Virus record (IMG/VR): IMGVR_UViG_3300042289_000986
Coordinates: 124,001 to 188,000 of that record
DNA: 64,000 bases
Direction: 5' to 3' (one strand)
The notes under the pieces are model-generated. The model was not told where the DNA came from, did no database searches, and saw only the letters and a program-made list of their open reading frames with translations. Both the position numbers and the translations under genes were made by a program. This document shows positions 577 through 64,000 of this stretch, one piece after another. Every line of letters begins with the position of its first letter. Positions within the stretch are counted from its first letter, which is position 1.

Positions 577-582
577 TAAATA
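577..582 (+). promoter_or_regulatory. T4-like late promoter core TAAATA
   Basis: aaTAAATA lies 6 nt before the ATG at 589; the same motif recurs before many structural genes. Confidence 0.6.
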
Positions 583-588
583 TTAATA

Positions 589-2697
589 ATGGCTACTTTC
601 TCTTATAGTCCTACAAAATTAAACGAAAACGAATCCAAACAATATAGTGTAATTGGTGGTGAGGCAGGTTCTATTTCTATGGGACAACATGTGGTAAAAG
701 ATCCTTATGGTTCTTTTATTTCGGAAGATAGATCTCATATGATTTTATCCGATAAATTTGGTAGCTTAATACAATTTATTGGAGGAAAAGTAGTATTTAA
801 AACTGCATCCGATTTGTGCATGTTTACAAATCAAAACATGTTTATGTCGGTTACAGGTGATGTTCAATCGAGTATTGGTGGTAGTAAACATGATTTTGTT
901 GAGGGTGATGTTACTGCACAGGCAGGTAATGACAAACAAAGAGCCGCTGCTGAAAAACTTCAAGGATTAACAAGTCAAATAGATAAAGAAAAATTAGATA
1001 CTATTAAATCTACCGAAGGACAAGAAATGGATTGTCCAGTTTGTTCTCAAAAACATTTGTCAGAAAGAGGTTCTGCTTTAGTTGGAAAAATTTTTAAAAC
1101 GTTAAGAAGATTTTTACCAAACATGGCATATCCTTTAGATATTGTTCAAAAGATTATAAATTTTTTGGTAGTTCCTTTTTTAAATGCATCAACTACAAAT
1201 TTATCATTAACTGGAGGAAAAGGCTGTGGTAGTCCTGGCTGTAAAAATGGAAGAATAAAATCGCCAGCAACTGCTGTTCAAGAAGGAAACAGTAAAGCAG
1301 CCGATGCATATGAATCTAGAAAACTTCAAATTGCAAGCGCACAAACAGAAATGGGAAAAGGTGGTGCAAAGGTTGTTAGAGAAGGGGGCGATGTAGTTTG
1401 GCAGGTTGGTTTAGCAAAAAATGATGCACCAACAGTAACGTACAAAGATCCGGTTCCTACGGCATTATATTTACAAAATTCAAAAATACCTGGTGAATTT
1501 TTTGCTCTTGGCGCAAAAGGAACAGCAAAACAAGCTATACATTCAGATCCTTTAATTAATCCAGGTAGCTTATTGCTTGATGTTGCTAATAAGTTTGAAG
1601 TTTCGGCAGGATCGCCAGGTGTAGATTTAAAAACTTCTGGTAAAGCAACTTTTTCTGGTGCAGTTACAAATATTGTTGCAAACCAAGGAGAATTAACTTT
1701 AACATCAGGTAATAAAACAACTTTAAAAGGAAAAAATGTTTTAATTGATGCTAGAGATAGATCTGGTGATAGTGGAGTTAAAATTGAATCTGATAATACT
1801 CTTGTTGCTGGAAAGTTAAGTGTAACTGGAGATCTTGCTTTAAAAGGATCTTTGATGATGGATGGGGGATTGTATGTTACACATTTAACATGCCCATCAG
1901 AAAGAATTCAAACATCTCCTAGTGGTGGAGCACATTATGTTCATTCAAATGCAACGTGGAATGATTTTGCTCCAACAAAAGCAAGTGCTTTGGATATATT
2001 TGATAAAGTTTTTAAAAAAGCTACCCGTGATGTTTATAATGTTTTAACTGCAAATATTTTAAGTTTTGCCGAAATTCAAACTTTAGTAGAAGAAACATAT
2101 TCTACTATTATGATGAAAATTCCTTTGGATAATTTTGGTTTACCAACTGGTATTGGTATTAGTGGTTGGTATCCTACTGGAATGAAACCGTTGATGGTTA
2201 TTGTTCCAGGTGTTATGCCTGGTCCTGGTGCTGCTCTTGGTTTTGTTATTCCTGGCCAAGTAACCCCTGTATTCAATTTTACACATAATCATAACAGTCC
2301 AGGACAAAATCACTCACACGACACGACTGTACCAGCTTTTAATGGCTATACGGGTGCAGCAGCAGCAAGAGCAGCCAGACCAGATCCTACACACGTACCA
2401 ACACCTGCACCTGCTAGAGGTATGGGCGAGTCACCTGGACATAAAACAATGGGTGATATTTCTTCTTGTGGTGGAGGTGGTGGAGCGTTTGTAGGAAGTG
2501 GTGGGGGTGGTACTGCTTCTCCTAGTAGAGTTGATACGTCCCTTGGTAGAAGAAATCAGAAATATAACATCAATACAAACGATGCCTTTAACAATCAAAA
2601 TTATGTGGATATAACACCACAAACTGGAAACTACTCATTTAACCCAGACGGTAGTTTAAATCCACCACCAGACTTTAACGGACTAGGAAATTGTTAA
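589..2697 (+). CDS. Central spike (gp5-C/gpV-like beta-helix) with Zn-ribbon insertion and His-x-His tip motifs
   Basis: VTGDVQSSIGGSKHDFVEGDV and VAGKLSVTGDLALKGSLMMDGGLYV beta-helix repeats; CPVC...CGSPGC; THNHN and HSHD near the C-terminus; follows the OB-fold gene. Confidence 0.65.
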   Translation: MATFSYSPTKLNENESKQYSVIGGEAGSISMGQHVVKDPYGSFISEDRSHMILSDKFGSLIQFIGGKVVFKTASDLCMFTNQNMFMSVTGDVQSSIGGSKHDFVEGDVTAQAGNDKQRAAAEKLQGLTSQIDKEKLDTIKSTEGQEMDCPVCSQKHLSERGSALVGKIFKTLRRFLPNMAYPLDIVQKIINFLVVPFLNASTTNLSLTGGKGCGSPGCKNGRIKSPATAVQEGNSKAADAYESRKLQIASAQTEMGKGGAKVVREGGDVVWQVGLAKNDAPTVTYKDPVPTALYLQNSKIPGEFFALGAKGTAKQAIHSDPLINPGSLLLDVANKFEVSAGSPGVDLKTSGKATFSGAVTNIVANQGELTLTSGNKTTLKGKNVLIDARDRSGDSGVKIESDNTLVAGKLSVTGDLALKGSLMMDGGLYVTHLTCPSERIQTSPSGGAHYVHSNATWNDFAPTKASALDIFDKVFKKATRDVYNVLTANILSFAEIQTLVEETYSTIMMKIPLDNFGLPTGIGISGWYPTGMKPLMVIVPGVMPGPGAALGFVIPGQVTPVFNFTHNHNSPGQNHSHDTTVPAFNGYTGAAAARAARPDPTHVPTPAPARGMGESPGHKTMGDISSCGGGGGAFVGSGGGGTASPSRVDTSLGRRNQKYNINTNDAFNNQNYVDITPQTGNYSFNPDGSLNPPPDFNGLGNC

Positions 2698-3755
2698 CTA
2701 ACTTTAATACTCGAAACTGGAGCAGCATTTGATGTACTAATTTGTGTTCTGGCTTGTTGAAGAAACATATTAGTCATCGCACCAATCACCGATTGATTGT
2801 TTGCGTTATTTGGATTTAGAAGTGTATTATATGATAGTGCTGCATCTCTGGGATCTATTTGTAGATTGCTAATAATATAATTGTAATGATCTCTTTGTGA
2901 TTTTTCTGTGGTCATTATTTTTTTATAATCAAAAGTTTGTTCAGCAAACCCTTTCATAATTCCGATATTACCAAATGGCATATCATTATATACATCAATA
3001 TTTTTTATATTTAAATTTTTTGCTACTTTCATCATAACATCATCATAATATTTTAAATATATTCTTTGTGTTGATACGTTTGATGCATTTTTAAAATCTA
3101 ATACAACAAAATAATTTTTTGTCATTTGATAGAATGATAAACTTGCTTTCCATTGTGGGTTTGAAAGAAACCATTTACTAATAAAGGATGTAAAATCCGT
3201 AGCGTGTTTTTCTTTTTCTGTTTGTACAAAAGTAGATACAAATTCTTTGACATCTTCTGGTGTAAATCTTTTTAAAAGTTCATCTACGTTCCATGCGCTA
3301 GGGGGAACTGTTAAGGCCCCAAATTTGTACTCTTTTATTCCTGATAAATCTATTGATATCTCAACGTTTTGTGTGGTTCCCTTTCTTACTGGCATACCTT
3401 CTGAATCACAAACGACATTATTGATTACTTGGACGCCGCCAGCTTGAAGTACTTCAGTTTGAGTAATAACTCTTGGAAGAAAATAAAGCCATGTTGCAGA
3501 CAATGTTAATCCTAAAGACACTCTAGGATCACCAACCTCTAATAATCCAGTAAAACTTGTGAATGGGGTTAAATCGAATTCTGGTGGTTCTACAACCACT
3601 GGATCGACAGTCTCGTCATTTGCAACTTTTAAAATATCACAAAGAAATGGGAGGATGTTATAATTTGGGTTTAAAAAATTGGCAGAACCCGTTGGGAAAT
3701 TTGAAGGATTCCACAACGGACTTTTACACAAAATATCTTTATCTACTTCAAGCAT
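2694..3755 (-). CDS. Hypothetical protein
   Basis: 353-aa ORF, tightly packed at the end of the minus-strand block; no family recognised. Confidence 0.8.
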   Translation of the reverse strand: MLEVDKDILCKSPLWNPSNFPTGSANFLNPNYNILPFLCDILKVANDETVDPVVVEPPEFDLTPFTSFTGLLEVGDPRVSLGLTLSATWLYFLPRVITQTEVLQAGGVQVINNVVCDSEGMPVRKGTTQNVEISIDLSGIKEYKFGALTVPPSAWNVDELLKRFTPEDVKEFVSTFVQTEKEKHATDFTSFISKWFLSNPQWKASLSFYQMTKNYFVVLDFKNASNVSTQRIYLKYYDDVMMKVAKNLNIKNIDVYNDMPFGNIGIMKGFAEQTFDYKKIMTTEKSQRDHYNYIISNLQIDPRDAALSYNTLLNPNNANNQSVIGAMTNMFLQQARTQISTSNAAPVSSIKVS

Positions 3756-3757
3756 AA

Positions 3758-4150: not shown

Positions 4151-4154
4151 ATTA

Positions 4155-4475: not shown

Positions 4476-4499
4476 ATATTATAATTTATTTTCAAACAG

Positions 4500-5258
4500 T
4501 TATTTAACAAGGGCAGAAATTATATATTTTAATTCTGTATTTTGTTCGTCTTTAATTTGAAATATAAAGACTTTGTATTCGTTATTTATTTTTACTGTGA
4601 TGTTATTTTTAAATGTTGCTAAACTTTTAAAAATTTCAATTTTTATTGAAAGAGGATTTGATATAGAATCGCCATCAAATTGATTCGAAACTAGCATTGA
4701 AACGTTATCAATATTTTGTAGGGTTTTATCATCAATCTCAGCATACACCTGATCTTCTTTAGTATAAAAATATATCTTATTAACTTCATTTACGAAAGAA
4801 TAAGCTGACATAATTTGTCTAACCTTTTGCGCCGAAATTTCAAAAATTGTGTTAAACTTTAATTTAGCAATTGTTTCAATATTAATTGTCGATTCTTTAA
4901 TAATGTTGTCATCAACTAAATGATATTTAAAATGTGTATTTTCTTTCGTGACTTCGTTTGAAGACTTACAAGTTAAGTGATTGTTTTTGTGTATAAGTTC
5001 AAAACTACCGCCTTCTCCTAAACACTCTAAACCTGTTAAAAACTTTTTGATGTTTATCAAATTTAACTTCAAGTCTTGAATTTCTATAGGCAATTTTGTT
5101 TTTGCGTATAGAATAACGCTGTTATCTATAGAAGAACAAACAGTATAAATGCTGTCTTTATTAGTTTTTAAAACACAGCTTTCAGTTAACCTATTAACTG
5201 GGAATAAAATTTTTTCTAAAGCTGATTTTGGAATTGGAATATGTCTTTCATTACTCAT
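4500..5258 (-). CDS. 45: Sliding clamp, gp45-like
   Basis: ~250 aa; alternating helix/strand pattern of a PCNA/gp45 fold (LNLINIKKFL...FKYHLVDDNII); replication context; start moved to the ATG at 5258. Confidence 0.6.
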   Translation of the reverse strand: MSNERHIPIPKSALEKILFPVNRLTESCVLKTNKDSIYTVCSSIDNSVILYAKTKLPIEIQDLKLNLINIKKFLTGLECLGEGGSFELIHKNNHLTCKSSNEVTKENTHFKYHLVDDNIIKESTINIETIAKLKFNTIFEISAQKVRQIMSAYSFVNEVNKIYFYTKEDQVYAEIDDKTLQNIDNVSMLVSNQFDGDSISNPLSIKIEIFKSLATFKNNITVKINNEYKVFIFQIKDEQNTELKYIISALVK

Positions 5259-5715: not shown

Positions 5716-5716
5716 T

Positions 5717-6562
5717 TTACAGGTCTTTTAAGATCTCTTGCATTTTTCTATCTTGTTCAGATAGCTCGTCTTCCGAATTAACTGTTTCGGTAATTTCTGG
5801 TTCAACTACATCAACTTTGAAATCATCTTCATGATGTTCTGTTTTTTGAACTTCTTCTTTACCGAGAAAGTGGAAATCCAAAATTTCCTTGATCTCATCA
5901 TAGTTTTTTCTTTGGAAGATTGTATCCAAGCTTTTAATTGAAGAGTATACCTCATCGCTATTTTCAAGACCCTCAATTTGTGAAGGTGACACAAATTTAG
6001 AGCTTGTGTAATTTGGATAACCAGCAGCATTCTTTTCTACTTTAATTCTAAGATTGCATCCTTTTTCGGACAAATCAAAAATTCTAAAACCAAATTCTGA
6101 TGCATCATCTCCATCAATAGCAGATTGAATTACTTTCTGTAATTGTGCTCCTGCATTGAGGATTTTAACTTGTCCTTCGTTTGAAGGATTCGATGGATCA
6201 CTGATTACATATACATTATAAAGCCACTTTTCTGCTTTTTTCAATGGTTTAACTTGGTCGATAAACGTTTGATTTTTGGTAGCCCACATTTTTGCACGAT
6301 ATTCATCGATTGGACACTTTTCTCCATAAGTGTTTGGGCAAAGAACTGAAACTTTTTTACCAGTTTGAATGCTATCAAAAATGTGTTGATAATAATGGAA
6401 TCTGGTCTTTTTACCATCTTCCAAATTAGGAAGAAGACGAACCAAATATGTCTTATCTGGTTCAAATTTCATGAAATCTTTGAAACCTGAATCAGTATTG
6501 GTTTTTGTGGTAAGTGCTTCCTTGAGGGAATCGAATAGGCTTTCGTTGTATTTGTTATTCAT
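5717..6562 (-). CDS. 32: Single-stranded DNA-binding protein, gp32-like
   Basis: YLVRLLP, CPNTYGEKCPIDE, NVYVISDPSNPSNEGQVKI, FDLSEKGCNLRIK, YPNYTSSKF; acidic C-terminal tail. Confidence 0.92.
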   Translation of the reverse strand: MNNKYNESLFDSLKEALTTKTNTDSGFKDFMKFEPDKTYLVRLLPNLEDGKKTRFHYYQHIFDSIQTGKKVSVLCPNTYGEKCPIDEYRAKMWATKNQTFIDQVKPLKKAEKWLYNVYVISDPSNPSNEGQVKILNAGAQLQKVIQSAIDGDDASEFGFRIFDLSEKGCNLRIKVEKNAAGYPNYTSSKFVSPSQIEGLENSDEVYSSIKSLDTIFQRKNYDEIKEILDFHFLGKEEVQKTEHHEDDFKVDVVEPEITETVNSEDELSEQDRKMQEILKDL

Positions 6563-6576
6563 AATTTATATCTTTT

Positions 6577-6604
6577 ATCTTAGCATGTTTTATTTAAGTG
6601 TCAA
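6577..6604 (-). promoter_or_regulatory. Sigma70-type promoter for gp32
   Basis: TTGACA-16 nt-TAAGAT, with TG extension. Confidence 0.55.
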
Positions 6605-7240
6605 ACTATTTTTGACAAAATTTTTGACTTTAGCGGTTGCTGTTTTTGTTAATTGTTGTGTTTTAGGGGATTGTTGATATCTTGTTTTAAAAGCTACCAA
6701 ATTTTCGTAAAGATTATTGGCAAAAAGATATATTTCATCTTTTGGAATTTTATCTAAAACTCTAATAAAGTCTCCAAGCTCCATAAGGCTATAAGGATTG
6801 ATTCGATGTTCTCTATAGTGATTCAACCAAGAATACATGTAGCCAGTTTTATGATAGATATAATCTTCAATAAAAATTTTATGTTCTAAACAAAACATTC
6901 CAACAAACCTTAAACTGTTTTTTATTTCATCTAATTGTTTTTCAGGATCTCTGTCTTCTTTTTGTTTTTGAAAAAGCGCATAGGTTTTTAAAGCACTTCT
7001 TGTTGTAAAATAATTTAAAGTGGGATATTTTTCATTGGGATGAAGTTCATTGAATGCCAAAAAATAATCATTCCAATTAATATGATTGTATCTTTTTAAG
7101 AAAGTTTCAATTTTATGAAGAAACGCAACCGTATTGGGATCAATGTCAGAAAAATTTTTTCTTAATTGATAAGGTTGTCCCTTTCTTAAGTGTTTGATAT
7201 AAAAATTGTAAATTTGTTTTTGTGAATCGTTAAGAGTCAT
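6590..7240 (-). CDS. 59: Helicase loader, gp59-like
   Basis: 216 aa (T4 gp59 is 217 aa); immediately upstream of gp32 as in T4; HRINPYSLMELGDFIRVLD resembles T4 NIISFETFILLDSFLNIID. Confidence 0.55.
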   Translation of the reverse strand: MTLNDSQKQIYNFYIKHLRKGQPYQLRKNFSDIDPNTVAFLHKIETFLKRYNHINWNDYFLAFNELHPNEKYPTLNYFTTRSALKTYALFQKQKEDRDPEKQLDEIKNSLRFVGMFCLEHKIFIEDYIYHKTGYMYSWLNHYREHRINPYSLMELGDFIRVLDKIPKDEIYLFANNLYENLVAFKTRYQQSPKTQQLTKTATAKVKNFVKNSLTLK

Positions 7241-7533
7241 CTTTTTTTATTAAATTTTGACCTAAACATTTTTTTATAAACGTTTGGTGTTGAACTTAAA
7301 TAGGTTCTAATAATTGATTGGAGGTTTGATTCTCCCAATAAAGCAAAATAAATTTTTTGCGTTTTTTTATCATCTACCAAAAATTTTAAAAAATTTAAAT
7401 AATTCATTTTTTTGTTTTTACAAATACAAACAAATGCTCCGAATTTCATTGTAATTTGTTCAAATTCTTCGACATCTAAAGCATTGGATGGGTTTGATAC
7501 TTCTTCTAGTTGTTGTGTTGATGTTATAATCAT
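7237..7533 (-). CDS. Hypothetical protein (occupies the position of T4 gp33)
   Basis: 98-aa ORF directly upstream of the gp59-like gene; no sequence similarity recognised. Confidence 0.65.
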   Translation of the reverse strand: MIITSTQQLEEVSNPSNALDVEEFEQITMKFGAFVCICKNKKMNYLNFLKFLVDDKKTQKIYFALLGESNLQSIIRTYLSSTPNVYKKMFRSKFNKKR

Positions 7534-8417: not shown

Positions 8418-8439
8418 AAGGATATTTATGCACTATTGA

Positions 8440-9849: not shown

Positions 9850-9852
9850 AAA

Positions 9853-9880
9853 ATTATAATGCTTTTTAGATAAAAAGCAA
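9853..9880 (-). promoter_or_regulatory. Sigma70-type promoter for the helicase, overlapped by an inverted repeat
   Basis: TTGCTT-16-TATAAT; TGCTTTTTA-GA-TAAAAAGCA at 9860-9879. Confidence 0.55.
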
Positions 9881-9886
9881 TATTAA

Positions 9887-10984: not shown

Positions 10985-10986
10985 AA

Positions 10987-11385: not shown

Positions 11386-11392
11386 ATATAAT

Positions 11393-11420: not shown

Positions 11421-11426
11421 GTATTT

Positions 11427-14659: not shown

Positions 14660-14688
14660 ATATTACACTATTTTAAGAAATAAATCAA
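14660..14688 (-). promoter_or_regulatory. Sigma70-type promoter for the DNA polymerase
   Basis: TTGATT-17-TAATAT, 6 nt before the ATG. Confidence 0.6.
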
Positions 14689-16001: not shown

Positions 16002-16030
16002 AATAAAACTTAACTATAAATGTTTAGAAT

Positions 16031-17827
16031 TCAACTTAATAAACTTGTGACTCCTTTGCTTTTTTCTAAAAGCAAAACATTATCAACGTTTACCTTTGTG
16101 TGATTTTTATGAGATATAATATAAACTGATTCTTCGTATTTCTCAACTTTATTTTTTAATATCTCGATGATTTTTTCAATCCCATTATCATCAATAGCTG
16201 AATCAAACAGTTCATCATAAAAATTTAATGAAAAACTTGTTCCAGTGTGAAGTCGCAAAATATCTTGGAACATAAAAAGAATTGCAATATCAATTCTTTT
16301 ACGTTCTCCACCACTAAAATTAAAGTAAGAGCATTCTTTTCCTTTATCGTTAAAAATTGTTTCTTCAAACAGTTCATCAAATTCACATTTGCATGGTGCT
16401 TGTAGTTTTTTTAAATAAAAATTTAAACGCTGATTAAAAACATCTATTAATTTTTTGACAATATATGTTTTAATTCCTTCTTCTGATACAATATATTTTG
16501 CGGTATTTAAAACTTTTAATTTATTTTTAATGTTTTCCAACTCACTTTGCGTGTTATCAATATCTTTTTTACATTTTTTAATGTCAGAATCAAAATTTGA
16601 TTTTTCTATTTCAATTTTATTGATATCTTTTTTATAATCAGTGTTTTGTTTTTTAAGAGTTTGAATATTTTGTTCTTTTAAACGTAAAGATGTTATTTCT
16701 TCATTTGTCTTTTTTTGTTTATTTTGAATTTTTTTAATTCCATCTTCAATTTCTTTGAGTTTTTCTTGTAAAGATTCTATTTGATTGTTTAATTCTTGAA
16801 GATCTTTTTGTAAATTTTTAATTTCAATTTCTATTGTTTTAACACTTTGTTGGATGTGGTTAATATCTTCTTTACAGTATTCTCTATTGCATGTCGGGCA
16901 AATATTTCCTTTACTAAGAATTTTTTGTTTTTCTTTGTTTTTTTGATCAATTGATGATTCTATTTTTATTTTTTCTTTTGTTTTATTTGAAATATCAGTG
17001 TGTTGTGTTTTATAAAACTTTTCTAAAAATTTAAGTTTTTCGTTTAATTCAGCAATTTCATTTTTTAAATTATTTCCAGATTTGGTAGTTTCATTTTCAA
17101 GTTTATTTATTTGTTTTTGATTGATTTCTATTTTTTGTTGAAGTTCTTTAATTTTATTTTTTTTATTGCTTTCATCATTATTTTTTAATTTTTCAAGCAT
17201 TTCTAAATTTTTTTGATGATTTATAAAATTATTACTCAAAAGATCATTTTGTTTTTTGCATTCATTAAAATCTGATCTAGTTTTAAGGAGCATTTCTCCA
17301 AAAACGTTTAGTTGCAAAATGCCTTCTATGAATTTTCTTTTATCGACTTTTTTTTGAGCCATAAAAGGCAGTGTATTATTTGAGGACATAATAACTGCAT
17401 TGTTAAAAACTTCTTCGTTTGCTCCTATTAGATTTTTTATATATTCATCACTTTTGGGTAAAGTTGATGGTGTTTCATCTTTACCATCAGATATAATAGT
17501 TATTTTACTGGGATTTAAAACTCTGTTAATTTCGTAACTTTTTTTATTTTTTTCTGTATGAATATCAAACTTAATAACCACATTACATTCTTTATTATTT
17601 TGATTGTGTTGTATTTTTTCTTTTTTCAGATCTCTAAGAGTGTTCCCAAACAAACACCAGTATAATGCATCTGCTATTGTGCTTTTTCCTATTCCATTTT
17701 TCCCGCCAATGTCTTTGTTTTCTCCAGTTATTAAATTAATTCCTTTTTGAAACTTTATTTCTAATGGTTTATCACCAATAGATAAAAAATTTTGAATTTT
17801 TATAGAATTAAAAATTACTTTTTTCAT
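16031..17827 (-). CDS. 46: Recombination nuclease ATPase subunit, gp46/SbcC/Rad50-like
   Basis: NFLSIG, NGIGKST, CPTC zinc hook, FSGGE, YDELFD, IISH. Confidence 0.95.
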   Translation of the reverse strand: MKKVIFNSIKIQNFLSIGDKPLEIKFQKGINLITGENKDIGGKNGIGKSTIADALYWCLFGNTLRDLKKEKIQHNQNNKECNVVIKFDIHTEKNKKSYEINRVLNPSKITIISDGKDETPSTLPKSDEYIKNLIGANEEVFNNAVIMSSNNTLPFMAQKKVDKRKFIEGILQLNVFGEMLLKTRSDFNECKKQNDLLSNNFINHQKNLEMLEKLKNNDESNKKNKIKELQQKIEINQKQINKLENETTKSGNNLKNEIAELNEKLKFLEKFYKTQHTDISNKTKEKIKIESSIDQKNKEKQKILSKGNICPTCNREYCKEDINHIQQSVKTIEIEIKNLQKDLQELNNQIESLQEKLKEIEDGIKKIQNKQKKTNEEITSLRLKEQNIQTLKKQNTDYKKDINKIEIEKSNFDSDIKKCKKDIDNTQSELENIKNKLKVLNTAKYIVSEEGIKTYIVKKLIDVFNQRLNFYLKKLQAPCKCEFDELFEETIFNDKGKECSYFNFSGGERKRIDIAILFMFQDILRLHTGTSFSLNFYDELFDSAIDDNGIEKIIEILKNKVEKYEESVYIISHKNHTKVNVDNVLLLEKSKGVTSLLS

Positions 17828-17838
17828 TAAACTTTCTT

Positions 17839-17867
17839 ATAATACCAGATTTATAAGAAAAAATCAA
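17839..17867 (-). promoter_or_regulatory. Sigma70-type promoter for gp46, overlapped by a 10-bp inverted repeat
   Basis: TTGATT-17-TATTAT; TTTCTTATAA(17833-42)/TTATAAGAAA(17851-60). Confidence 0.55.
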
Positions 17868-19765: not shown

Positions 19766-20401
19766 TTAGTTTTTAACAAAAAAATCATTAACAAATGATC
19801 TCTGCTCTTTTTTCCAACCTAAACCATTTAAATATGTTTCAACTTCTGGTGTATTATAGTTATTTTCTATTATCAACAATTTTATATTATAAGAATTAAC
19901 ATCAAAAGATTTTAAAACATCTAATTCATTACCTTCTGTATCTATAGATATAAAATCTATTTCATTATGATCAAAATGATTTTGAATACACCAATCTAAT
20001 CTTCTTGTTTGGATTTTTATGGTTTTTCTTTCTATATTTGAAAAATGTTTTTGTATATCATTAACCAAAACATCATCTACTTGTAAACCGCTCATAGCAG
20101 AATGTGGTTGATCTACATCTTTAATTGTAAAAAGCTCAAAATCTACTTCATCTTTATTTTCAGAAGAAATGGCAAAGTTTAAACAATTTTTTCTATTATT
20201 TTTGAGTTTATTAAAAGTTTCTAAAACAGGTTCAATACAAAGACAATCCCAACCATTTTTTTCAAAATGGTATGTGTTCGAATAATAAACACCGTCAGTA
20301 GCTCCTACTTCAATACATTTTCCATTTTGTTTGTCTGGAAAATATTGTCTTATAATTTGATCTACTTTTGGATCGAATTGACCATAAAACTCATTAATCA
20401 T
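19766..20401 (-). CDS. FkbM-family SAM methyltransferase
   Basis: IEVGATDG...SNT, CIEP, FISIDTEGNELDVL. Confidence 0.9.
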   Translation of the reverse strand: MINEFYGQFDPKVDQIIRQYFPDKQNGKCIEVGATDGVYYSNTYHFEKNGWDCLCIEPVLETFNKLKNNRKNCLNFAISSENKDEVDFELFTIKDVDQPHSAMSGLQVDDVLVNDIQKHFSNIERKTIKIQTRRLDWCIQNHFDHNEIDFISIDTEGNELDVLKSFDVNSYNIKLLIIENNYNTPEVETYLNGLGWKKEQRSFVNDFFVKN

Positions 20402-21630: not shown

Positions 21631-21635
21631 AAGGT

Positions 21636-27068: not shown

Positions 27069-28114
27069 ACTAATGAATTATACATTTCTTTTAAATATTC
27101 TACAACTTCTTTTTTATGATCAATATCTAAAGTATTGATATATTCTTCAATATCTTTTAATAAATCACCACTATTAAAGTTTTCTTCGTTTGAAATTTTT
27201 TGAATATCTTCTTCATTTTCAATATATTCTAAACGATATACTAAGGGATTCATGTTGTTAATTTTTGTGTTTAATCCCAATATAATATCATGTTCTATTT
27301 TTAGATCGACAACCAATGCCACAATATTATTGTGTATAATTTTTTTAAGTTCTTCAACTTCATATTCATCATTAATTAGTTTTTTAGCCGATATTTTATA
27401 ATGTTTTGGTGATAATGTGTTTTCAATAAAAGAAAAAGAATGTTTTTCTAAATCAAATATATAAATTCCTTTATCTTCTGCAACGGCTCCAAAATTTTGT
27501 TGATATGGACTTCCTAAATAAACTATATCACCTTCTTTATAGGTTCTGTGATCTCTTTTATGAAAATGTCCCGAAACAATCAAATTAGCTTTATTAAAAA
27601 GATTAGAGTAAGACAGTCCGTGATCACATTGTTTATAGTTATTCATATAAAATGAAACTATTTCAAAGTGACCAAAGATGATATCAACTTTTTCTAATTT
27701 TTCAATATCATATCCCCAAGGAACAAATGTTATTTTTTTATTAAAATCAGTTTCTAAAATTAATGGAGTTTTATCAACAATTTTTATATTTTTCCAACCA
27801 TCAAAAATAGATATTGAATTTATATTACTATCGTTTTTTAAAAAACTATCATGGTTTCCGGTGGAAATAATAATATTAAAATCTTTAAAATAATCAAAAA
27901 ATTGTTTTGCAATAGATAAAGTCTCTACTGATATTTCATTTCTATTGTGAAATATATCACCAGGTATAAAAATATCATCAATTCCTTCTTCTAAGAATTT
28001 TTGAGATGCCCATTTTGCAAAATTTAAACTAACCTCATGCCACATTTCGCTGTCTTGGCCTAAACCGAGATGAATATCTGAAAAACTTCCTATTTTTTTG
28101 TTTTTTAGTTTCAT
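27065..28114 (-). CDS. 47: Recombination nuclease subunit, gp47/SbcD/Mre11-like
   Basis: SDIHLG, GDIFH, GNHD, FGHFE, SGHFH, YLGSPYQ. Confidence 0.95.
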   Translation of the reverse strand: MKLKNKKIGSFSDIHLGLGQDSEMWHEVSLNFAKWASQKFLEEGIDDIFIPGDIFHNRNEISVETLSIAKQFFDYFKDFNIIISTGNHDSFLKNDSNINSISIFDGWKNIKIVDKTPLILETDFNKKITFVPWGYDIEKLEKVDIIFGHFEIVSFYMNNYKQCDHGLSYSNLFNKANLIVSGHFHKRDHRTYKEGDIVYLGSPYQQNFGAVAEDKGIYIFDLEKHSFSFIENTLSPKHYKISAKKLINDEYEVEELKKIIHNNIVALVVDLKIEHDIILGLNTKINNMNPLVYRLEYIENEEDIQKISNEENFNSGDLLKDIEEYINTLDIDHKKEVVEYLKEMYNSLV

Positions 28115-28848
28115 TCTAACAATCTATCTCTTTCTTTCATGATTCGAATATTATTATTTTTAAGCAAATTACTATATCCTTCTGACATGGACATTAATTC
28201 TCTGCGATATTTTTCATGAGTTTCATGTATATGTTTTTCTTTTTTAATTCTATTTCGAAAAGCATTAAAAGCAATTCTTGTAAAATATGAAAACGGATTG
28301 GTTCCCTTTTCTCTATTATATTTTTTAGATATTAAGGCTTTCATCATACGAATAATACCATCTCCAACCATTTCTTCTCTATAACTGTAATTAATAAAAT
28401 TGGGAGCATAGCTTAATTTGTTTGAAATCTTACTAACCATTTCTGCTAAATCATTAGTCATTATACCAGATTCGTAAAATTTTACAATTTCTTCATCAAA
28501 CTTTTTAGGTTCAACGTAAAAAACTTTTTTATCCGGTTTTTTTTTGTTTTTTATTTTTTCAATTACTGGTTCTTCTTCAACCTCTTCCGCTTCTTCAACT
28601 TCTTCATCCTCTTCTTTTTCGTGGTCGCTTACAGAGTCAAACATAGAGGATGCATAACTAATATTTTCATCTAGATCTTCTTCTAAAGAAGAATCTTCGT
28701 TTTCATCAATAAAATCATCGTAATCAATAATTTTTTTCTTTCTTTTTTTAAAGAAAGAAGGTTTTGGTTTAATAACTTCAACTTTTTTATCTTTTTTTAA
28801 TTTAGTTGTCTTGTTATCTTTTTTTAATTTAGATTGTTTTTTCTTCAT
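28111..28848 (-). CDS. 55: Late-transcription sigma factor, gp55-like, with charged N-terminal extension
   Basis: LSYAPNFINYSYREEMVGDG, NPFSYFTRIAFNAFRNRIKKEK. Confidence 0.9.
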   Translation of the reverse strand: MKKKQSKLKKDNKTTKLKKDKKVEVIKPKPSFFKKRKKKIIDYDDFIDENEDSSLEEDLDENISYASSMFDSVSDHEKEEDEEVEEAEEVEEEPVIEKIKNKKKPDKKVFYVEPKKFDEEIVKFYESGIMTNDLAEMVSKISNKLSYAPNFINYSYREEMVGDGIIRMMKALISKKYNREKGTNPFSYFTRIAFNAFRNRIKKEKHIHETHEKYRRELMSMSEGYSNLLKNNNIRIMKERDRLLE

Positions 28849-32421: not shown

Positions 32422-32535
32422 AGAATGTCGTCTTTAAGTTTTCTTCTTTATTTAAAATATAATAAAGTAAAAGGTATTTAATTTATATTTAAAATTATTC
32501 ATAGGTTTTTTAAAAACATGTGTAAATATTAATAT

Positions 32536-34844: not shown

Positions 34845-34852
34845 TATAAATA
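34845..34852 (+). promoter_or_regulatory. T4-consensus late promoter TATAAATA
   Basis: Exact T4 late consensus, 5 nt before the ATG at 34858. Confidence 0.7.
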
Positions 34853-35233: not shown

Positions 35234-35261
35234 TTGATTTATTCTAATATACTAGTAATAT
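35234..35261 (+). promoter_or_regulatory. Sigma70-type promoter
   Basis: TTGATT-16-TAATAT, 7 nt before the ATG at 35269. Confidence 0.5.
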
Positions 35262-40270: not shown

Positions 40271-40276
40271 TAAGTA
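40271..40276 (+). promoter_or_regulatory. Late promoter variant TAAGTA
   Basis: caTAAGTA, 6 nt before the gp15 ATG. Confidence 0.55.
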
Positions 40277-40282: not shown

Positions 40283-41161
40283 ATGAAAAATTACACCTTT
40301 GCGTGGGAAATTCAAACTTTATTAGAGCAGTTTGTTTCGGCTTTTAATGATGTAATCATTAAAAGATATGATAAAAACAAAAATGCTATCGCTCCAACGA
40401 GCGGTTTTAAAGTTAGATATATTTATGCACCAAAACAAAGGGTAATAAATAGTCTAACAACACCCGCACCGGGTGGAATTACTGCACCTGTCATTGCTGT
40501 TAATATAACAAGTATTTCAAGAGACAATAGTCGCGTGTTTAACAAACATGAAGGGTTTGATGTTGCTTATGTACCCAACGATGGAAGCGGAACATACGTA
40601 AAAAATATACACCAGCCAGTTCCAATTAATATTAGCGTCAATATGACAATATTGACAAAATATCAATCGGATATGGATCAAATTTTAACTAATTTTATTC
40701 CATATTGTGATCCTTATGTTATTATTTCTTGGAAATTACCAGCAGTATCTAAATCGTCTATTCCATATGAAATAAGATCAGAAATTTTATGGAGCGGAAA
40801 TGTTAATTTAAACTATCCAACTGATATATCTCCAACTCAAGCCTTTCGTCTAACAGCAGATACAAGTTTTACAATTAAAGGTTGGCTGTTTAAAAAGATG
40901 GATGAAACTATCAATAAAATTTACACAATACAATCTGATTATTACGATGGAAGGTTATTGGTACAAGATCCTGCAAAATCTCTCATACAAAGTTTTGAAG
41001 ATGTTTTCGGTCCTTGGGAAAATTACCCAGGTACAGAACTTCCACCAGAAGAAATATCTGAACTTCCTCCATTAATTGATGATAATATCTCAAATGCATT
41101 AATAGCATTCGACGGAGCAATATTAGTTGATATTGAAGGGAACATTTTGATAAATATATAA
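40283..41161 (+). CDS. 15: Tail sheath stabiliser/terminator, gp15-like, with C-terminal extension
   Basis: FVSAFNDVIIKR, YAPKQR, SRDNSR, PVPINI, DQILTNFIPY, FTIKGWLF. Confidence 0.85.
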   Translation: MKNYTFAWEIQTLLEQFVSAFNDVIIKRYDKNKNAIAPTSGFKVRYIYAPKQRVINSLTTPAPGGITAPVIAVNITSISRDNSRVFNKHEGFDVAYVPNDGSGTYVKNIHQPVPINISVNMTILTKYQSDMDQILTNFIPYCDPYVIISWKLPAVSKSSIPYEIRSEILWSGNVNLNYPTDISPTQAFRLTADTSFTIKGWLFKKMDETINKIYTIQSDYYDGRLLVQDPAKSLIQSFEDVFGPWENYPGTELPPEEISELPPLIDDNISNALIAFDGAILVDIEGNILINI

Positions 41162-41167: not shown

Positions 41168-43057
41168 ATGGCACAAAGGAATTTTACACAATTTAGTCCA
41201 AGAACTTTTCCTTTAACTGGTGATTATGTCGTTGGTTATAAAAATGATGGTTCAGAAGAAATGCGAACAACCCTTCAGAACATTATTGATTTAGTTTATA
41301 ACTCAGAACCAAGAAACTCAAGTGGATTTAGTATTGTTAAAGCCAATTCTTCATTTTGGGCTTATAATGGAACAGATTTAAAACAACTTTCTGGTAATTG
41401 GCAAAGTACATTCAACACAGTATGCTCTTTATCTACTCTTTGGGATGCACAAGCAGAATTTATTGACTTAACTAATTTTGTAAGCTCTAATTCTGCTAAT
41501 TGGGAATATCAAGGAACAGATATTAAAGCCTTAACGGCAAATTGGCAATCAACTTATATCTCAGTTCAAAATAATGGAGGAACCACTTGGGCTTATAATG
41601 GAACAGATGTTAAACAATTAACAGGTAATTGGCAAACAACATATTCAATTGTTAGCAGTAATTCTGCTTTATGGAACTTGGGTGGTTTCGGTTCTGGAGC
41701 AACAGGCGCAACTGGCGCAACAGGTGTCGGAGTAACTGGTGCTACTGGAACACAGGGTCCAATTGGTTCTATCGGACCAACGGGCGCAGCAGGACCATCT
41801 ACTTCATATTATGAATTTAAAGCAGATGTTAATGCAACAAATACACCACCAAATGCTGGTACTATTAGATGGAATAATTTAACACAGTTAAGTGCAACAC
41901 AAATTCATACAAGTCATTTAACTGATACCTTTCTTGATGTTGATATATTTTTAGCCTTACTTAAAGAAAATGATACATTAATTATTCAAGATAGAAATAA
42001 TTCTGCAAATTATCAAAGATGGAGAGTTAATGCAGCACCAATTGTAGCTGATAATAGTTTTATTACATTTCCAGTTACTTTAATAAATTCAACAACAACA
42101 TTTACTAGTAATCAATCTTTAATTTTAGCAGTAGTATCAGCAGGTATAGCTGGACCTACTGGTCCAACTGGACCAACTGGAGCAGGACAAACTGGAGCCA
42201 CAGGACCAACAGGAGCTACTGGTTCAAATTTTAATTATACATCAATTACATTAAATAGAACACTTTCATCGAATGCTGGTTATATTTTTGATACAACAAG
42301 TAGTCCATTAACTGCAACATTACCTTTAAGTCCCGCAATTGGTGATTTTATTAATATAACAGCAACGATTCAACCAGGAAATCTATTAACTATCGATAGA
42401 AATGGTAGTAATATAAATTCTTCTGCTAGTGCTTTAGGTGTTGATATATCAAGTAATTTTTCTTTGGTTTACACAACATCATCTATTGGATGGAGGTTTA
42501 TTCCATATTCAGGATTAACAAACCCAACTATTAAAATTTATAAAGCTGTTTGGAATACTCTTCTTACAAATTTAACTGGTACTAGTAGAATACCATTTAC
42601 AACAACAGTTGTTAATACAGATCCAGAAATATTTGGTGGAATTACGAATCCTGGCATTTTAGGAGCACAATACATTACCATCAAAAAAACTGGTTATTAT
42701 ATGATTAATTCTAACCTTCACTTGTATGATTTACAAAACGGTTTGCAATTAATGGTTTCACTTTGGAAAAATGAACCTTCTACTGGATACGCAACACCAG
42801 TAAAAGTCCAATCAATCGTAGATTTTCAAAGTGGAACAGTTTCACAAGACCAAATTTTATTTGGTAATGCGTTGTTAAACGTAACTCAAGATGATACTAG
42901 AATTTGGTTACAAGTTGAACACAATGGAACAAGTTTAGTTCCACCGATACCTAATGGTGGACCATTCCCATCTCTTAGAGACGTTTTAGTTGATCCTGCT
43001 CCACCAAACCAAACAACTTCAACACCACCAGATATTATCATAACAAAATTAGCATAA
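41168..43057 (+). CDS. Modular fibre protein: Trp/Asn repeat stalk, short collagen segments, gp9/gp10-like domain, C1q/BclA-CTD-like head
   Basis: W.Y.GTD.K.L..NWQ repeats; GATGATG; DTTSSPLTATLP..P..GD...LTIDRNG; TIKKTGYYMI...IIITKLA. Confidence 0.75.
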   Translation: MAQRNFTQFSPRTFPLTGDYVVGYKNDGSEEMRTTLQNIIDLVYNSEPRNSSGFSIVKANSSFWAYNGTDLKQLSGNWQSTFNTVCSLSTLWDAQAEFIDLTNFVSSNSANWEYQGTDIKALTANWQSTYISVQNNGGTTWAYNGTDVKQLTGNWQTTYSIVSSNSALWNLGGFGSGATGATGATGVGVTGATGTQGPIGSIGPTGAAGPSTSYYEFKADVNATNTPPNAGTIRWNNLTQLSATQIHTSHLTDTFLDVDIFLALLKENDTLIIQDRNNSANYQRWRVNAAPIVADNSFITFPVTLINSTTTFTSNQSLILAVVSAGIAGPTGPTGPTGAGQTGATGPTGATGSNFNYTSITLNRTLSSNAGYIFDTTSSPLTATLPLSPAIGDFINITATIQPGNLLTIDRNGSNINSSASALGVDISSNFSLVYTTSSIGWRFIPYSGLTNPTIKIYKAVWNTLLTNLTGTSRIPFTTTVVNTDPEIFGGITNPGILGAQYITIKKTGYYMINSNLHLYDLQNGLQLMVSLWKNEPSTGYATPVKVQSIVDFQSGTVSQDQILFGNALLNVTQDDTRIWLQVEHNGTSLVPPIPNGGPFPSLRDVLVDPAPPNQTTSTPPDIIITKLA

Positions 43058-43066
43058 ATAAAAAAT

Positions 43067-46431: not shown

Positions 46432-46455
46432 TGTAAAGTGATAAATATTTAGAAT

Positions 46456-51968: not shown

Positions 51969-52007
51969 AATATTATTTATTCGTTTTTTTCATTTTTAAA
52001 GAACAAA

Positions 52008-52838: not shown

Positions 52839-52839
52839 T

Positions 52840-57470: not shown

Positions 57471-57471
57471 A

Positions 57472-60842: not shown

Positions 60843-60876
60843 ATTCTATACTTATGATTTTAAACTGTATATTTGA

Positions 60877-62745: not shown

Positions 62746-62821
62746 GATTATATTATATTTAGTCTGACTTATAAGTAATCAATGTTTTTTGTTTATTAAA
62801 GAATAAGTATTCAAAATTAGC

Positions 62822-63367
62822 ATGGCAAACACTTATATTCACACATTACCAGATGTTTTAGCAACTGATCCTAATGCATATACTATTTTAGATTATGAAA
62901 ATCAATTTGAAGAATATGTAACAGCAAAAGTTACTCTTGCATCTTTAGCTAATTTTACAAACAATACATTTTTAAATAGTACACCATATTTAAATAGTCT
63001 TTCTGCTACAACATACGTAGAAAACAATAGCGCAAACATTCAAGGAATTTCAAATGTCGTAAATTCGTTTAGTTCAAACAGTATTAATGTTAATACTTTT
63101 GTTAATAGTAATAGTTCAAATATACAATCTGTTTATACTCATTATAATTCACAAAGTGCTAATTTTGCGACTAGAAACTATGTCAATGGCGGGTTTTTAC
63201 CGCTGTCTGGTGGAGATGTTATTGGTGAATTGTTTGCTACACAATATGGAGTAGGAAACACAGTAATTGTCGATGGAACGTTGGGTACGGTTGTTAGAAA
63301 AATGCAAATATTTGATATAAATGGCGCTTCTATAGGATTTATCCCAATTTATAATTCTATAACTTAA
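62822..63367 (+). CDS. Short fibre-like protein
   Basis: NSANIQ/NSSNIQSVY repeats, FLPLSGG; TAAGTA at 62804-09. Confidence 0.7.
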   Translation: MANTYIHTLPDVLATDPNAYTILDYENQFEEYVTAKVTLASLANFTNNTFLNSTPYLNSLSATTYVENNSANIQGISNVVNSFSSNSINVNTFVNSNSSNIQSVYTHYNSQSANFATRNYVNGGFLPLSGGDVIGELFATQYGVGNTVIVDGTLGTVVRKMQIFDINGASIGFIPIYNSIT

Positions 63368-63921
63368 ACCAAATAAGAAATTGTTATTTGTTGGTTTGTA
63401 TCTGAAGTTAAAATAAATTTATTATCAGAAGCAACTAAAACAAATTCAACCATAAAATCCAACGGATCAATAACTTGGACACCGGAAACACATGGAAGCT
63501 GTATATCTACTGCTCCAACAAATGAACTAACAAACGGGACACGACTATCTCTACTAAGTTTACCATATCCTGCTTCGTTTTCTATAATAATATCAAAAAA
63601 ACCATCTCTCTTTGGGGTTTGCGGTATTGTAAATGCTAGATATTTTTCTTTATAAATATAAAAAGGAACTTTAATTCCTTCAAACGGTAAATTTGATGCA
63701 GATAAGTTTTTAACAGCAGAAAAAGGATTCCAAATAGTTGTTCCTTCAAACATAACTTCATTATCAGGAACTAAATACACTGCTCTTATATCAAAAAAAT
63801 TATTACCTTTAACTAAAATGTTAAAATTTTGAACAGATGTCAAAAGCGGGTTAGTAACTACAAATTTATAAGGCTTAACATCGGTAATTTTTGGTTTTCC
63901 GTGAATAAAAAAGCGATCCAT
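63364..63921 (-). CDS. IPT/TIG-like Ig-domain structural protein
   Basis: PKITDVKP, ILVKGNNF, FTIP, DIIIENEAGY; TAAGTA at 63936-31. Confidence 0.6.
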   Translation of the reverse strand: MDRFFIHGKPKITDVKPYKFVVTNPLLTSVQNFNILVKGNNFFDIRAVYLVPDNEVMFEGTTIWNPFSAVKNLSASNLPFEGIKVPFYIYKEKYLAFTIPQTPKRDGFFDIIIENEAGYGKLSRDSRVPFVSSFVGAVDIQLPCVSGVQVIDPLDFMVEFVLVASDNKFILTSDTNQQITISYLV

Positions 63922-64000
63922 TGTTAATATTACTTATTAAAGATCTATTTGTTTTTATTTAAAGAAATAAATAAGTATAGTCTAAGTATATTTGAATGAG

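What the first reader, a model, noticed from the sequence alone, without database searches (positions are those of the whole stretch)
577..63936. Late promoter motif TAA(A/G)TA often 5-8 nt from the ATG: possible leaderless late mRNAs
Seen: gap from motif end to ATG is 6 nt (589), 5 (8417), 7 (32536), 5 (34858), 6 (40283), 6 (43067), 8 (46456), 5 (51968), 6 (60842), 9 (63921), 10 (62745), 11 (41168), 12 (62822). None of these has a GGAG/GAGG Shine-Dalgarno. Established: T4 gp55 initiates a few nt downstream of TATAAATA. Inference: a relaxed gp55 consensus, with many transcripts starting at or within a few nt of the AUG, pointing to a host lineage that barely uses SD. Caveat: TAAATA is common in AT-rich DNA; the evidence is positional.
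Basis: partly seen in the sequence, partly recalled or inferred. Interest (0 to 1): 0.6.

Follow-up and report, generated by a model that had tools for sequence, protein, structure and literature searches.

The report
Late promoters abutting start codons
An uncultured freshwater T4-like phage, and its whole clade, places both its late-promoter box (TAARTA) and its host-type promoters 5-7 bases before the ATG, so most first genes of its operons are probably made from mRNAs with almost no leader and no Shine-Dalgarno site; no RNA data exist to confirm the start sites.

Summary
All 13 sites exist at the stated coordinates and gaps. In the complete 211.6-kb phage genome that contains the window, TAAGTA and TAAATA are the two most enriched 6-mers just before start codons. 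A box lies 5-6 nt before the start of 31 genes, against 1.7 in dinucleotide shuffles (z 21). Gaps of 0-4 nt are not enriched.

In 69 related IMG/VR sequences plus this genome, the count jumps from 6 at gap 4 to 60 at gap 5 and 89 at gap 6.

The phage is a very distant T4-like myovirus. It has a gp55 late-sigma homologue (w28111-28848) and a PCNA-fold sliding clamp (w4500-5258). The boxes precede sheath, tube, portal, terminase, neck and fibre genes.

In T4 the same box lies 13-34 nt from the ATG. Here it sits where the predicted transcription start falls on or next to the A of ATG.

A second class, TTGAYW-N16-18-TAnnnT, shows the same geometry, with a peak at exactly 6 nt. The habit is therefore genome-wide, not late-specific. 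Shine-Dalgarno cores occur only at chance level.

No RNA run holds this phage, so start sites remain inferred. The host is unknown.

The parts
577..582 (+). late box TAAATA, 6 nt before ATG 589 (702-aa unknown protein)
8423..8428 (-). late box TAAATA, 5 nt before ATG 8417 (DHH phosphoesterase-like, 295 aa)
32523..32528 (+). late box TAAATA, 7 nt before ATG 32536 (94 aa)
34847..34852 (+). late box inside a full TATAAATA, 5 nt before ATG 34858; this supports 34858 rather than TTG 34822 as the start
40271..40276 (+). late box TAAGTA, 6 nt before ATG 40283 (gp15-like tail sheath stabiliser)
41151..41156 (+). late box TAAATA, 11 nt before ATG 41168 (collagen-like tail fibre, 629 aa)
43055..43060 (+). 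late box TAAATA, 6 nt before ATG 43067 (tail fibre, 367 aa)
46442..46447 (+). late box TAAATA, 8 nt before ATG 46456 (tail fibre, 483 aa)
51974..51979 (-). late box TAAATA, 5 nt before ATG 51968 (231 aa, first gene of a long minus-strand operon)
60849..60854 (-). late box TAAGTA, 6 nt before ATG 60842 (129 aa, heads the 994/912/631-aa operon)
62756..62761 (-). late box TAAATA, 10 nt before ATG 62745 (portal, gp20); 30 of 39 relatives keep a box 5-15 nt from the ATG
62804..62809 (+). late box TAAGTA, 12 nt before ATG 62822 (181 aa), divergent from the portal promoter in a 76-nt spacer
63931..63936 (-). late box TAAGTA, 9 nt before ATG 63921 (185 aa)
28111..28848 (-). gp55-family late sigma factor (245 aa; core at residues ~103-222, with a K/E/D-rich N-terminal extension); the only sigma-like gene in the genome
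   Evidence: phmmer vs T4 gp55 6e-10; phrog_234 7e-26; matches gp55 of T4, Mosig and P-SSM4; Sigma70_r2 1e-5
4500..5258 (-). sliding clamp (gp45 analogue), 252 aa, recognised only by fold
   Evidence: AF2 pLDDT 87.6; Foldseek PCNA TM 0.75, E 6e-12; no sequence-level match
14660..14688 (-). host-type promoter TTGATT-N17-TAATAT, with the -10 ending 6 nt before ATG 14653 of the DNA polymerase gene (gp43)
17839..17867 (-). host-type promoter TTGATT-N17-TATTAT, 11 nt before ATG 17827 (gp46)
9853..9880 (-). host-type promoter TTGCTT-N16-TATAAT before the gp41 helicase gene; the -10 ends 3 nt before the first ATG (9849) and 6 nt before the second (9846)
35234..35261 (+). host-type promoter TTGATT-N16-TAATAT, 7 nt before ATG 35269 (97 aa)
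16007..16034 (-). host-type promoter TTGAAT-N16-TAAGTT, 5 nt before ATG 16001 (glycosyltransferase-like, 438 aa)

Best explanation
The window belongs to a complete 211.6-kb genome of an uncultured freshwater T4-like myovirus.

TAARTA (usually ATAARTA) is its late promoter. It is a single -10-like box without a -35 element, read by host RNA polymerase carrying the phage's gp55-family sigma. By analogy with T4, the phage sliding clamp probably assists.

Unlike in T4, the box sits 5-12 nt (mode 5-6) before the ATG of the first gene of each late transcription unit. T4 geometry places the box at -13 to -6. Sigma-70 geometry places a -10 hexamer at -12 to -7. Under either, the transcript starts on the A of the AUG or 1 nt before it at gaps 5-6, and carries a leader of at most about 7 nt at the longer gaps.

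Such mRNAs would be translated without a Shine-Dalgarno site, by binding of the ribosome to the 5'-terminal AUG. Downstream genes would be translated by coupling, because their starts overlap or touch the preceding stop.

The host-type -35/-10 promoters of replication and other non-structural genes follow the same rule. The layout therefore reflects how this clade's host starts translation, not something peculiar to late genes.

Shown: the motif, its position, its conservation, the gp55 and clamp genes, and the absence of SD sites. Inferred: the start sites, the dependence on gp55, and the translation mode.
For: Motif and position:
- Statistics as in the observation check.
- Sharp onset across the clade. 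Of 1247 distinct gene starts, gaps 0-4 hold 10, 3, 11, 9 and 6 sites. Gaps 5-12 hold 60, 89, 44, 34, 34, 25, 18 and 19. An ATG closer than 5 nt would lie upstream of the predicted start, which explains the cliff.
- T4's box lies at -13 to -6 (PMC1524935).

Start-site context:
- At gap 5 the base before the ATG is T or C in 80% of sites, and the predicted +1 is the A.
- 94% of box-proximal starts are ATG.

Promoter rather than mRNA signal:
- There is no information at -35.
- The box occurs at 56 of 172 unit-first genes but only 5 of 111 tightly coupled genes.
- It precedes sheath, tube, terminase, portal, neck, prohead protease, gp15 and fibre genes. It does not precede gp43, gp41, UvsX, gp46, gp47, Dda or gp32.
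- A divergent pair has start codons only 12 nt apart. A 14-nt palindrome between them carries one box for each strand.

Machinery:
- A gp55 homologue is present.
- A PCNA-fold clamp is present.

Conservation:
- 30 of 39 portal orthologues, 23 of 26 neck orthologues (15 at gap 6) and 20 of 22 protease orthologues keep a box 5-15 nt from the ATG in otherwise divergent DNA. A and G swap at position 4.

Contrast with other phages:
- The gap is 13-34 nt in T4, mostly 15-28 in Pelagibacter phage Mosig and 19-31 in P-SSM4.

Independent second class:
- TTGAYW-N16-18-TAnnnT with the -10 ending 4-11 nt from the start occurs at 16 genes, against 0.5 in shuffles.
- The peak is at exactly 6 nt in a 226-kb relative (12 genes) and in the 68 other relative loci (20 genes).

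No SD:
- Cores occur at chance level and G is depleted upstream of starts.
- 165 of 212 genes of at least 80 aa either abut a promoter or are coupled to the gene before.
Against: - No RNA data exist. All 24 runs that hold the phage are DNA metagenomes, so no start site is observed.
- gp33 was not found by profiles built from T4, Mosig and P-SSM4.
- The mode is gap 6, which under T4 numbering leaves a 1-nt leader.
- About half of the sites have gaps of 7-12. These imply leaders of 1-7 nt, and how such mRNAs are translated without an SD site is not explained by classic leaderless initiation.
- The base after the box is T in about 60% of sites. AARTAT could therefore also serve as a sigma-70 -10 hexamer. 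Some portal orthologues have TTGAT 15-16 nt upstream of the box.
- The major capsid gene has no box and has AGGAG 6 nt before its ATG.
- Only 14% of TAAATA copies lie near starts.
- The host is unknown.
Confidence: 0.6

Rival explanations
1. The box is a -10 element read by the host's primary sigma factor, as a -10-only or weak -35 promoter. It is not a gp55-dependent late promoter. The transcripts would still be leaderless, but not under late control.
For: The base after the box is T in 51-67% of sites, giving AARTAT with the key A at -11 and T at -7. Several portal orthologues carry TTGAT 15-16 nt upstream of the box. One window site (w21630) has a full TTGATA-N17-TATAAT next to the box. Both promoter classes peak at gap 6.
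Against: All six box positions are strict: changing the first T or the last A drops the site to background. This resembles T4 late promoters and differs from sigma-70 -10 hexamers, which tolerate variation. No -35 signal is seen over 66 sites. The box marks virion genes and is absent from replication genes. A gp55 homologue is encoded and conserved in relatives.
Confidence: 0.15
2. The box acts on the mRNA, not the DNA. It would be an A/U-rich translation enhancer or ribosome landing site (S1-type or Kozak-like) on transcripts that start further upstream.
For: The phage lacks SD sites and has A-rich, G-poor regions before all starts, with A at -3 in 57%. The position is fixed relative to the ATG.
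Against: The box is rare at internal, coupled genes (5 of 111), which need translation signals just as much. It matches the T4 late promoter core, and in T4, Mosig and P-SSM4 the same box lies 13-34 nt away from the ATG. In the divergent pair with start codons 12 nt apart there is no room for upstream promoters outside coding DNA. An unrelated -35/-10 promoter class shows the same spacing rule.
Confidence: 0.1
3. The pattern is an artefact of AT-rich DNA and ORF calling: the first ATG after an in-frame TAA.
For: TAAATA is common, with 321 copies on both strands. At gaps 6, 9 and 12 the TAA is in frame with the ATG.
Against: Shuffles give z above 20. Control TAA hexamers and the reverse complement are flat. 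Gap 5 is out of frame and as strong as gap 6. The TAA is the upstream stop in only 5 of 61 cases. The frame-agnostic test holds. The box is conserved across orthologues.
Confidence: 0.02

Closest known systems
Phage T4 late promoters (TATAAATA at -13 to -6) read by gp55 with gp33 and the gp45 clamp
   Same: The box shares the core TAAATA. It has no -35 element, lies before virion genes, and the phage encodes a gp55-family sigma and a sliding clamp.
   Different: The first T is not conserved, the preceding A is kept in only 62% of sites, and G is accepted at box position 4 in 29%. The box lies 5-12 nt from the ATG instead of 13-34 nt, leaving no room for an SD site. gp33 was not detected. The clamp is recognisable only by fold.
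Late promoter variants in other T4-like phages (NATAAATA in RB49, KVP40 and S-PM2; CTAAATA in Aeh1; PMC1524935)
   Same: These also lose the T at -13 and keep the core box.
   Different: Those phages keep leaders with SD sites. TAAGTA has not been described as a late box in that paper. Here the relocation next to the ATG is clade-wide.
Leaderless mRNAs (lambda cI from PRM; many genes of Actinobacteria, Deinococcus and haloarchaea)
   Same: A -10-type element lies about 6 nt before an AUG, there is no SD site, and AUG is strongly preferred as the start codon.
   Different: Here the pattern is inferred from sequence only. It applies to two promoter classes of one phage clade and is combined with near-universal coupling of downstream genes. 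In those organisms leadered genes still use SD sites.
SD-independent translation of Bacteroidia and bS21-encoding freshwater phages (PMC7797042, PMC9976891, PMC9723584)
   Same: SD sites are absent, the regions before starts are A-rich and G-poor, the phage carries a bS21 gene, and the habitat is a freshwater lake. The closest cellular ThyX homologues are from the Bacteroidota/Chlorobiota group.
   Different: The non-late promoters are TTGACA/TATAAT-like, not the Bacteroidota -33 TTTG / -7 TAnnTTTG type. bS21 lies among tRNA genes, not in the structural module described for those phages. Abundant leaderless mRNAs are not, to my knowledge, reported for Bacteroidia.
Poxvirus late promoters (TAAATG initiator overlapping the ATG); analogy from general knowledge, not tested here
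   Same: A short A/T-rich late element lies right at the start codon.
   Different: The polymerase is unrelated. There the element overlaps the ATG and the mRNAs gain poly(A) leaders. Here a gap of at least 5 nt is obligatory.

Membership tests
T4-type late transcription | Phage-encoded gp55-family sigma factor | tested here: met
   w28111-28848: phmmer vs T4 gp55 6e-10; phrog_234 7e-26; reciprocal hits in T4, Mosig and P-SSM4
T4-type late transcription | Promoter is a single, highly conserved -10-like box with no -35 element | tested here: met
   No information at -40 to -7 over 66 aligned sites; every position of the hexamer is required
T4-type late transcription | Box sequence TATAAATA | tested here: inconclusive
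   The core TAAATA is kept. The T at -13 is present in only 29% of sites, the A at -12 in 62%, and G replaces A at box position 4 in 29%. Only 21 full TATAAATA copies exist in the genome
T4-type late transcription | Precedes virion and late genes, not replication genes | tested here: met
   Boxes precede sheath, tube, TerL, portal, neck, protease, gp15 and fibre genes. None precedes gp43, gp41, UvsX, gp46, gp47, Dda or gp32. Exceptions: the DHH phosphoesterase gene has a box, and the major capsid gene has none
T4-type late transcription | Sliding clamp (gp45) as activator | tested here: inconclusive
   A PCNA-fold clamp gene exists (w4500-5258). Its role in transcription cannot be tested here. 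No T4-like clamp-binding motif is evident at the gp55 C-terminus
T4-type late transcription | gp33 co-activator | tested here: inconclusive
   Not found with a T4+Mosig+P-SSM4 profile. A 98-aa ORF (w7237-7533) sits at the syntenic position beside the gp59-like and gp32 genes but shows no similarity
T4-type late transcription | Transcription starts about 6 nt after the box | not testable with these tools
   No RNA run holds the phage
Leaderless mRNA | 5' end of the transcript at the A of the AUG | not testable with these tools
   No RNA data
Leaderless mRNA | -10-type promoter element 5-7 nt upstream of the start codon | tested here: met
   Late box mode is 5-6 nt with a cliff below 5. The sigma-70-like -10 peaks at exactly 6 nt
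Leaderless mRNA | AUG start codon and no Shine-Dalgarno site | tested here: met
   305 of 323 box-proximal starts are ATG; SD cores occur at chance level
Bacteroidota-infecting phage | Host-type promoters with -33 TTTG and -7 TAnnTTTG | tested here: not met
   TAnnTTTG and TTTG show no positional peak before starts. TTGAYW peaks 34-40 nt before the ATG with a TAnnnT partner
Bacteroidota-infecting phage | No SD sites, with A-rich and G-poor regions before starts | tested here: met

The most novel reading that the evidence does not exclude
A whole, abundant clade of freshwater T4-like phages (at least 70 IMG/VR contigs) expresses nearly every cistron either from a leaderless or near-leaderless mRNA or by coupling to the gene before it. 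It uses two promoter classes re-positioned onto the start codon. Its own bS21, tmRNA and about 22 tRNAs may help to bias host ribosomes toward such SD-free, 5'-end-dependent initiation. This would be the first T4-like lineage with an essentially leader-free transcriptome, and it would point to an unrecognised, common lake bacterium in which leaderless initiation is the main route.
Probability: 0.35. Interest if true: 0.8.

Novelty: new variant of a known kind. Interest (0 to 1): 0.6.

Why it matters
T4 late transcription is a textbook system. Its promoters have been described with ordinary SD-bearing leaders in the phages compared here. My library searches found no report of leaderless late mRNAs in T4-like phages.

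A clade that moved both its gp55-type and host-type promoters onto the start codon shows that promoter position co-evolves with the host's way of starting translation.

It gives practical rules for these genomes. The box plus 5-6 nt fixes the true start codon: for example ATG 34858 rather than TTG 34822, and probably the second ATG of the gp41 gene. The boxes also define the late regulon.

It offers a sequence-only signature of host translation biology for uncultured phages. It also supplies a natural set of several hundred predicted leaderless and very-short-leader mRNAs for testing how such messages are translated without an SD site.

Tried and rejected
- RNA evidence. The look-up of sequencing runs returned 24 lake-water DNA metagenomes and no RNA run. 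I did not use read laying, because assembled DNA contigs cannot show transcript ends.
- Close cultured relatives. There are none: no megablast match, and DNA polymerase and major capsid protein are at most 31-35% identical to any phage record.
- Host identification.
  - The phage bS21 matches only other phage or metagenome bS21 proteins.
  - No psbA, WhiB or T9SS tail domain was found.
  - The best cellular ThyX hits lean toward Bacteroidota and Chlorobiota, but only by a few percent identity.
  - The four genomes I checked that carry top ThyX hits (three MAGs and the Fibrisoma isolate genome) hold no T4-like polymerase.
  - The tmRNA is the one-piece type, which argues against an alphaproteobacterial origin.
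  - The host stays unresolved.
- gp45 by sequence. Pfam, PHROGs, hhalign and PDB sequence searches all failed. The first AF2 model, from a 2-sequence alignment, was useless at pLDDT 40. A 35-sequence alignment solved it.
- gp33. Not found.
- TTGA-N20-TAARTA. An apparent excess of this spacing came from 147-bp coding repeats in one gene, not from promoters.
- T4 at gap 5. In the frame-agnostic test T4 showed 13 sites at gap 5, but most are followed by very short ORFs, so this is noise.
- Literature. Searches found no report of leaderless late mRNAs in T4-like phages.

Full report
**What the window is**

The window is bases 124,001-188,000 of a 211,587-bp IMG/VR virus record with direct terminal repeats, rated complete. 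GC content is 32%.

It encodes T4-type core genes:
- In the window: DNA polymerase gp43, gp41 helicase, UvsX, gp46/gp47, Dda, gp32, portal gp20, gp15 and collagen-like tail fibres.
- Elsewhere in the genome: sheath, tube, large terminase, neck proteins, prohead protease, scaffold and major capsid protein gp23.

It is very far from every sequenced phage. There is no nucleotide match. The polymerase is at most 31% identical, and the capsid protein at most 35% identical, to pelagi- and cyanomyophage proteins.

The DNA occurs in at least 24 lake-water metagenomes. Seventy related IMG/VR loci were found through the portal protein. Most are 62-83% identical; a few reach 99-100% or only 43-53%.

**The observation**

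Three more lie in the window.

I called ORFs crudely over the whole genome (283 ORFs) and asked which 6-mers are enriched in the 25 nt before starts. TAAGTA (30-fold) and TAAATA (11-fold) came out on top without any prior.

The distance from the end of the box to the start codon peaks at 5 nt (13 sites) and 6 nt (18 sites), with a tail to 12 nt. The reverse complement and five TAA-containing control hexamers show no peak.

Results against 1000 dinucleotide-preserving shuffles of the upstream regions:

| Gap | Genes observed | Expected from shuffles |
|---|---|---|
| 5-6 nt | 31 | 1.7 (z 21) |
| 5-12 nt | 61 | 6.8 |
| 0-4 nt | 6 | 4.2 |
| 13-40 nt | 12 | 22.7 |

A test that ignores ORF calls gives the same answer. 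The hexamer is strict: every single-base variant except A/G at position 4 falls to background. The TAA of the box is the preceding gene's stop codon in only 5 of 61 cases.

**What the box is**

The box matches the core of the T4 late promoter. That promoter, TATAAATA, lies at -13 to -6, and its first T is already known to be poorly conserved in other T4-like phages (PMC1524935).

Evidence that this box is the phage's late promoter:
- Sixty-six aligned sites show a preference for A before the box and no -35 signal.
- The genome encodes one sigma-like protein, a gp55 homologue at w28111-28848, placed next to gp47.
- A 252-aa protein at w4500-5258 has no sequence-level annotation but folds as a PCNA-type sliding clamp. 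The model has pLDDT 87.6 and matches PCNA with TM 0.75.
- gp33 was not detected.
- Boxes precede sheath, tube, terminase, portal, neck, prohead protease, gp15 and three fibre genes. They do not precede the replication genes.
- Boxes are common at the first gene of a unit (56 of 172) and rare at tightly coupled genes (5 of 111).

This is the behaviour of a promoter, not of a general translation signal.

**Why the spacing implies leaderless mRNAs**

With the box at -13 to -6, the sixth base after it is +1. If the hexamer is instead placed like a sigma-70 -10 element (-12 to -7), the seventh base is +1. Gaps of 5 and 6 therefore put +1 on the A of the ATG.

The clade-wide data fit this closely. 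The set is this genome, a 226-kb relative and the 68 other relative loci, giving 1247 distinct starts. Gaps 0-4 hold 10, 3, 11, 9 and 6 sites. Gap 5 then holds 60, gap 6 holds 89 and gap 7 holds 44, with a slow decline after that. An ATG closer than 5 nt would be cut off by the transcript start, which explains the cliff.

Further support:
- In gap-5 sites the base before the ATG is a pyrimidine in 80%, the usual -1/+1 context of bacterial start sites.
- 94% of box-proximal starts are ATG.
- Orthologues keep the arrangement in otherwise divergent DNA, and A and G swap at box position 4. The counts are 30 of 39 portal genes, 23 of 26 neck genes (15 at gap 6) and 20 of 22 protease genes.
- One divergent gene pair outside the window has start codons only 12 nt apart. 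A 14-nt palindrome there carries one box for each strand.

**Contrast with known T4-like phages**

I ran the same pipeline on three reference genomes:

| Phage | Gap from box to ATG |
|---|---|
| T4 | 13-34 nt |
| Pelagibacter phage Mosig | mostly 15-28 nt |
| Prochlorococcus phage P-SSM4 | 19-31 nt |

All of these leave room for an SD site. Mosig nevertheless has six real ORFs, and P-SSM4 two, with the box exactly 5 nt from the ATG. This is a small independent sign that the geometry is functional elsewhere.

**Not only late genes**

A second, unrelated class, TTGAYW-N16-18-TAnnnT, also abuts start codons. This is a classical -35/-10 pair, which I take to be read by the host's primary sigma.
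- In this genome, 16 genes have the -10 ending 4-11 nt from the start, against 0.5 in shuffles. They include the polymerase gene (gap 6) and gp46.
- In the 226-kb relative and the other loci, the peak is at exactly 6 nt (12 and 20 genes).
- For the gp41 gene, the -10 ends 3 nt before the first ATG and 6 nt before a second ATG.

Of 212 genes of at least 80 aa, 75 abut one of the two promoter types and 90 start within 4 nt of the preceding stop. SD cores occur at chance level, and G is depleted before starts.

**Limits**

- No RNA run holds this phage, so no start site has been seen.
- About half of the boxes have gaps of 7-12 nt. These imply leaders of 1-7 nt, and how such mRNAs are translated without an SD site is open.
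- The base after the box is often T. Host sigma could therefore read AARTAT, and some portal orthologues have a TTGAT 15-16 nt upstream of the box. Dual recognition is possible.
- The major capsid gene breaks the rule. It has no box, a hairpin upstream, and AGGAG 6 nt before the ATG. A purine-rich element is conserved there in relatives.
- The host is unknown, and the clues conflict:
  - The absence of SD sites, the A-rich starts, a phage bS21 gene and the ThyX affinities hint at Bacteroidota or their relatives.
  - The non-late promoters are not of the Bacteroidota -33/-7 type.
  - T4-like phages are often far more AT-rich than their hosts, so GC content does not help.

**Verdict**

- The box as a gp55-type late promoter: likely, about 0.85.
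- Transcripts that start at or within a few nt of the AUG: well supported by geometry, about 0.65, but unproven.
- The case is a new variant of a known system, conserved across a large uncultured clade.

Noticed in passing
window 4500-5258 (-): A 252-aa ORF with no Pfam, PHROG or PDB sequence match folds as a PCNA-type sliding clamp (pLDDT 87.6, TM 0.75). More than 260 homologues at 55-98% identity exist in metagenomes, all unnamed.
   Followed up: yes
window 5717-7533 (-): gp32 (w5717-6562) is followed upstream by a 216-aa ORF and a 98-aa ORF, in the order of T4 genes 32, 59 and 33. The 98-aa ORF is a positional gp33 candidate but shows no detectable similarity.
   Followed up: partly
window 20398-27068 (-): A sugar-modification cluster lies between gp46 and gp47, about where T4 has its glucosyltransferase. 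It holds GDP-mannose 4,6-dehydratase, a C-methyltransferase, DUF5672 and five unknown 233-268-aa ORFs. It may modify DNA or a surface glycan.
   Followed up: partly
genome 191176-191213 (outside the window; locus L127): The major capsid gene has no late box. Upstream it has a hairpin and AGGAG 6 nt before the ATG, one of the very few SD-like sites in the genome. A CCATAGGAG / CCATAGAAAGG element is kept in relatives at variable distance.
   Followed up: partly
genome 70276-70491, 65194-65653 and 36-84 kb (loci L005-L007, L126): The phage encodes ribosomal protein bS21 (behind a host-type promoter 6 nt from its ATG), a one-piece tmRNA (tag ADEEMLLAA) and about 22 tRNAs. The bS21 matches only phage or metagenome proteins.
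   Followed up: partly
window 28111-28848 (-): The gp55 homologue carries a lysine/glutamate/aspartate-rich N-terminal extension of about 100 aa that T4, Mosig and P-SSM4 gp55 lack. The 226-kb relative has it too.
   Followed up: no
genome 1577-4744 (locus L003): A 1055-aa ORF contains about a dozen 147-bp (49-aa) tandem repeats. On the opposite strand these mimic a TTGACC-N20-TAAATA pattern.
   Followed up: partly
Pelagibacter phage Mosig MT647606 (loci L098-L105): Six ORFs of 185-245 aa have (A/T)ATAAATA exactly 5 nt before the ATG, and three have a -35/-10 pair 6 nt before it. A minority of pelagimyophage genes may also be leaderless. A published attempt to predict late promoters in these phages had failed (PMC7029224).
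   Followed up: partly
genome 34640-34657 (loci L004/L005): Divergent genes have start codons 12 nt apart. The 14-nt palindrome ATAAATATATTTAT between them carries a late box for each strand, each touching the other gene's start codon.
   Followed up: yes
genome 38000-58000 (loci L005/L006): This stretch has a few tRNA genes and only short ORFs on mixed strands, mostly with TTG or GTG starts. My ORF calls there are unreliable, so it may hold small early genes or non-coding RNAs.
   Followed up: no
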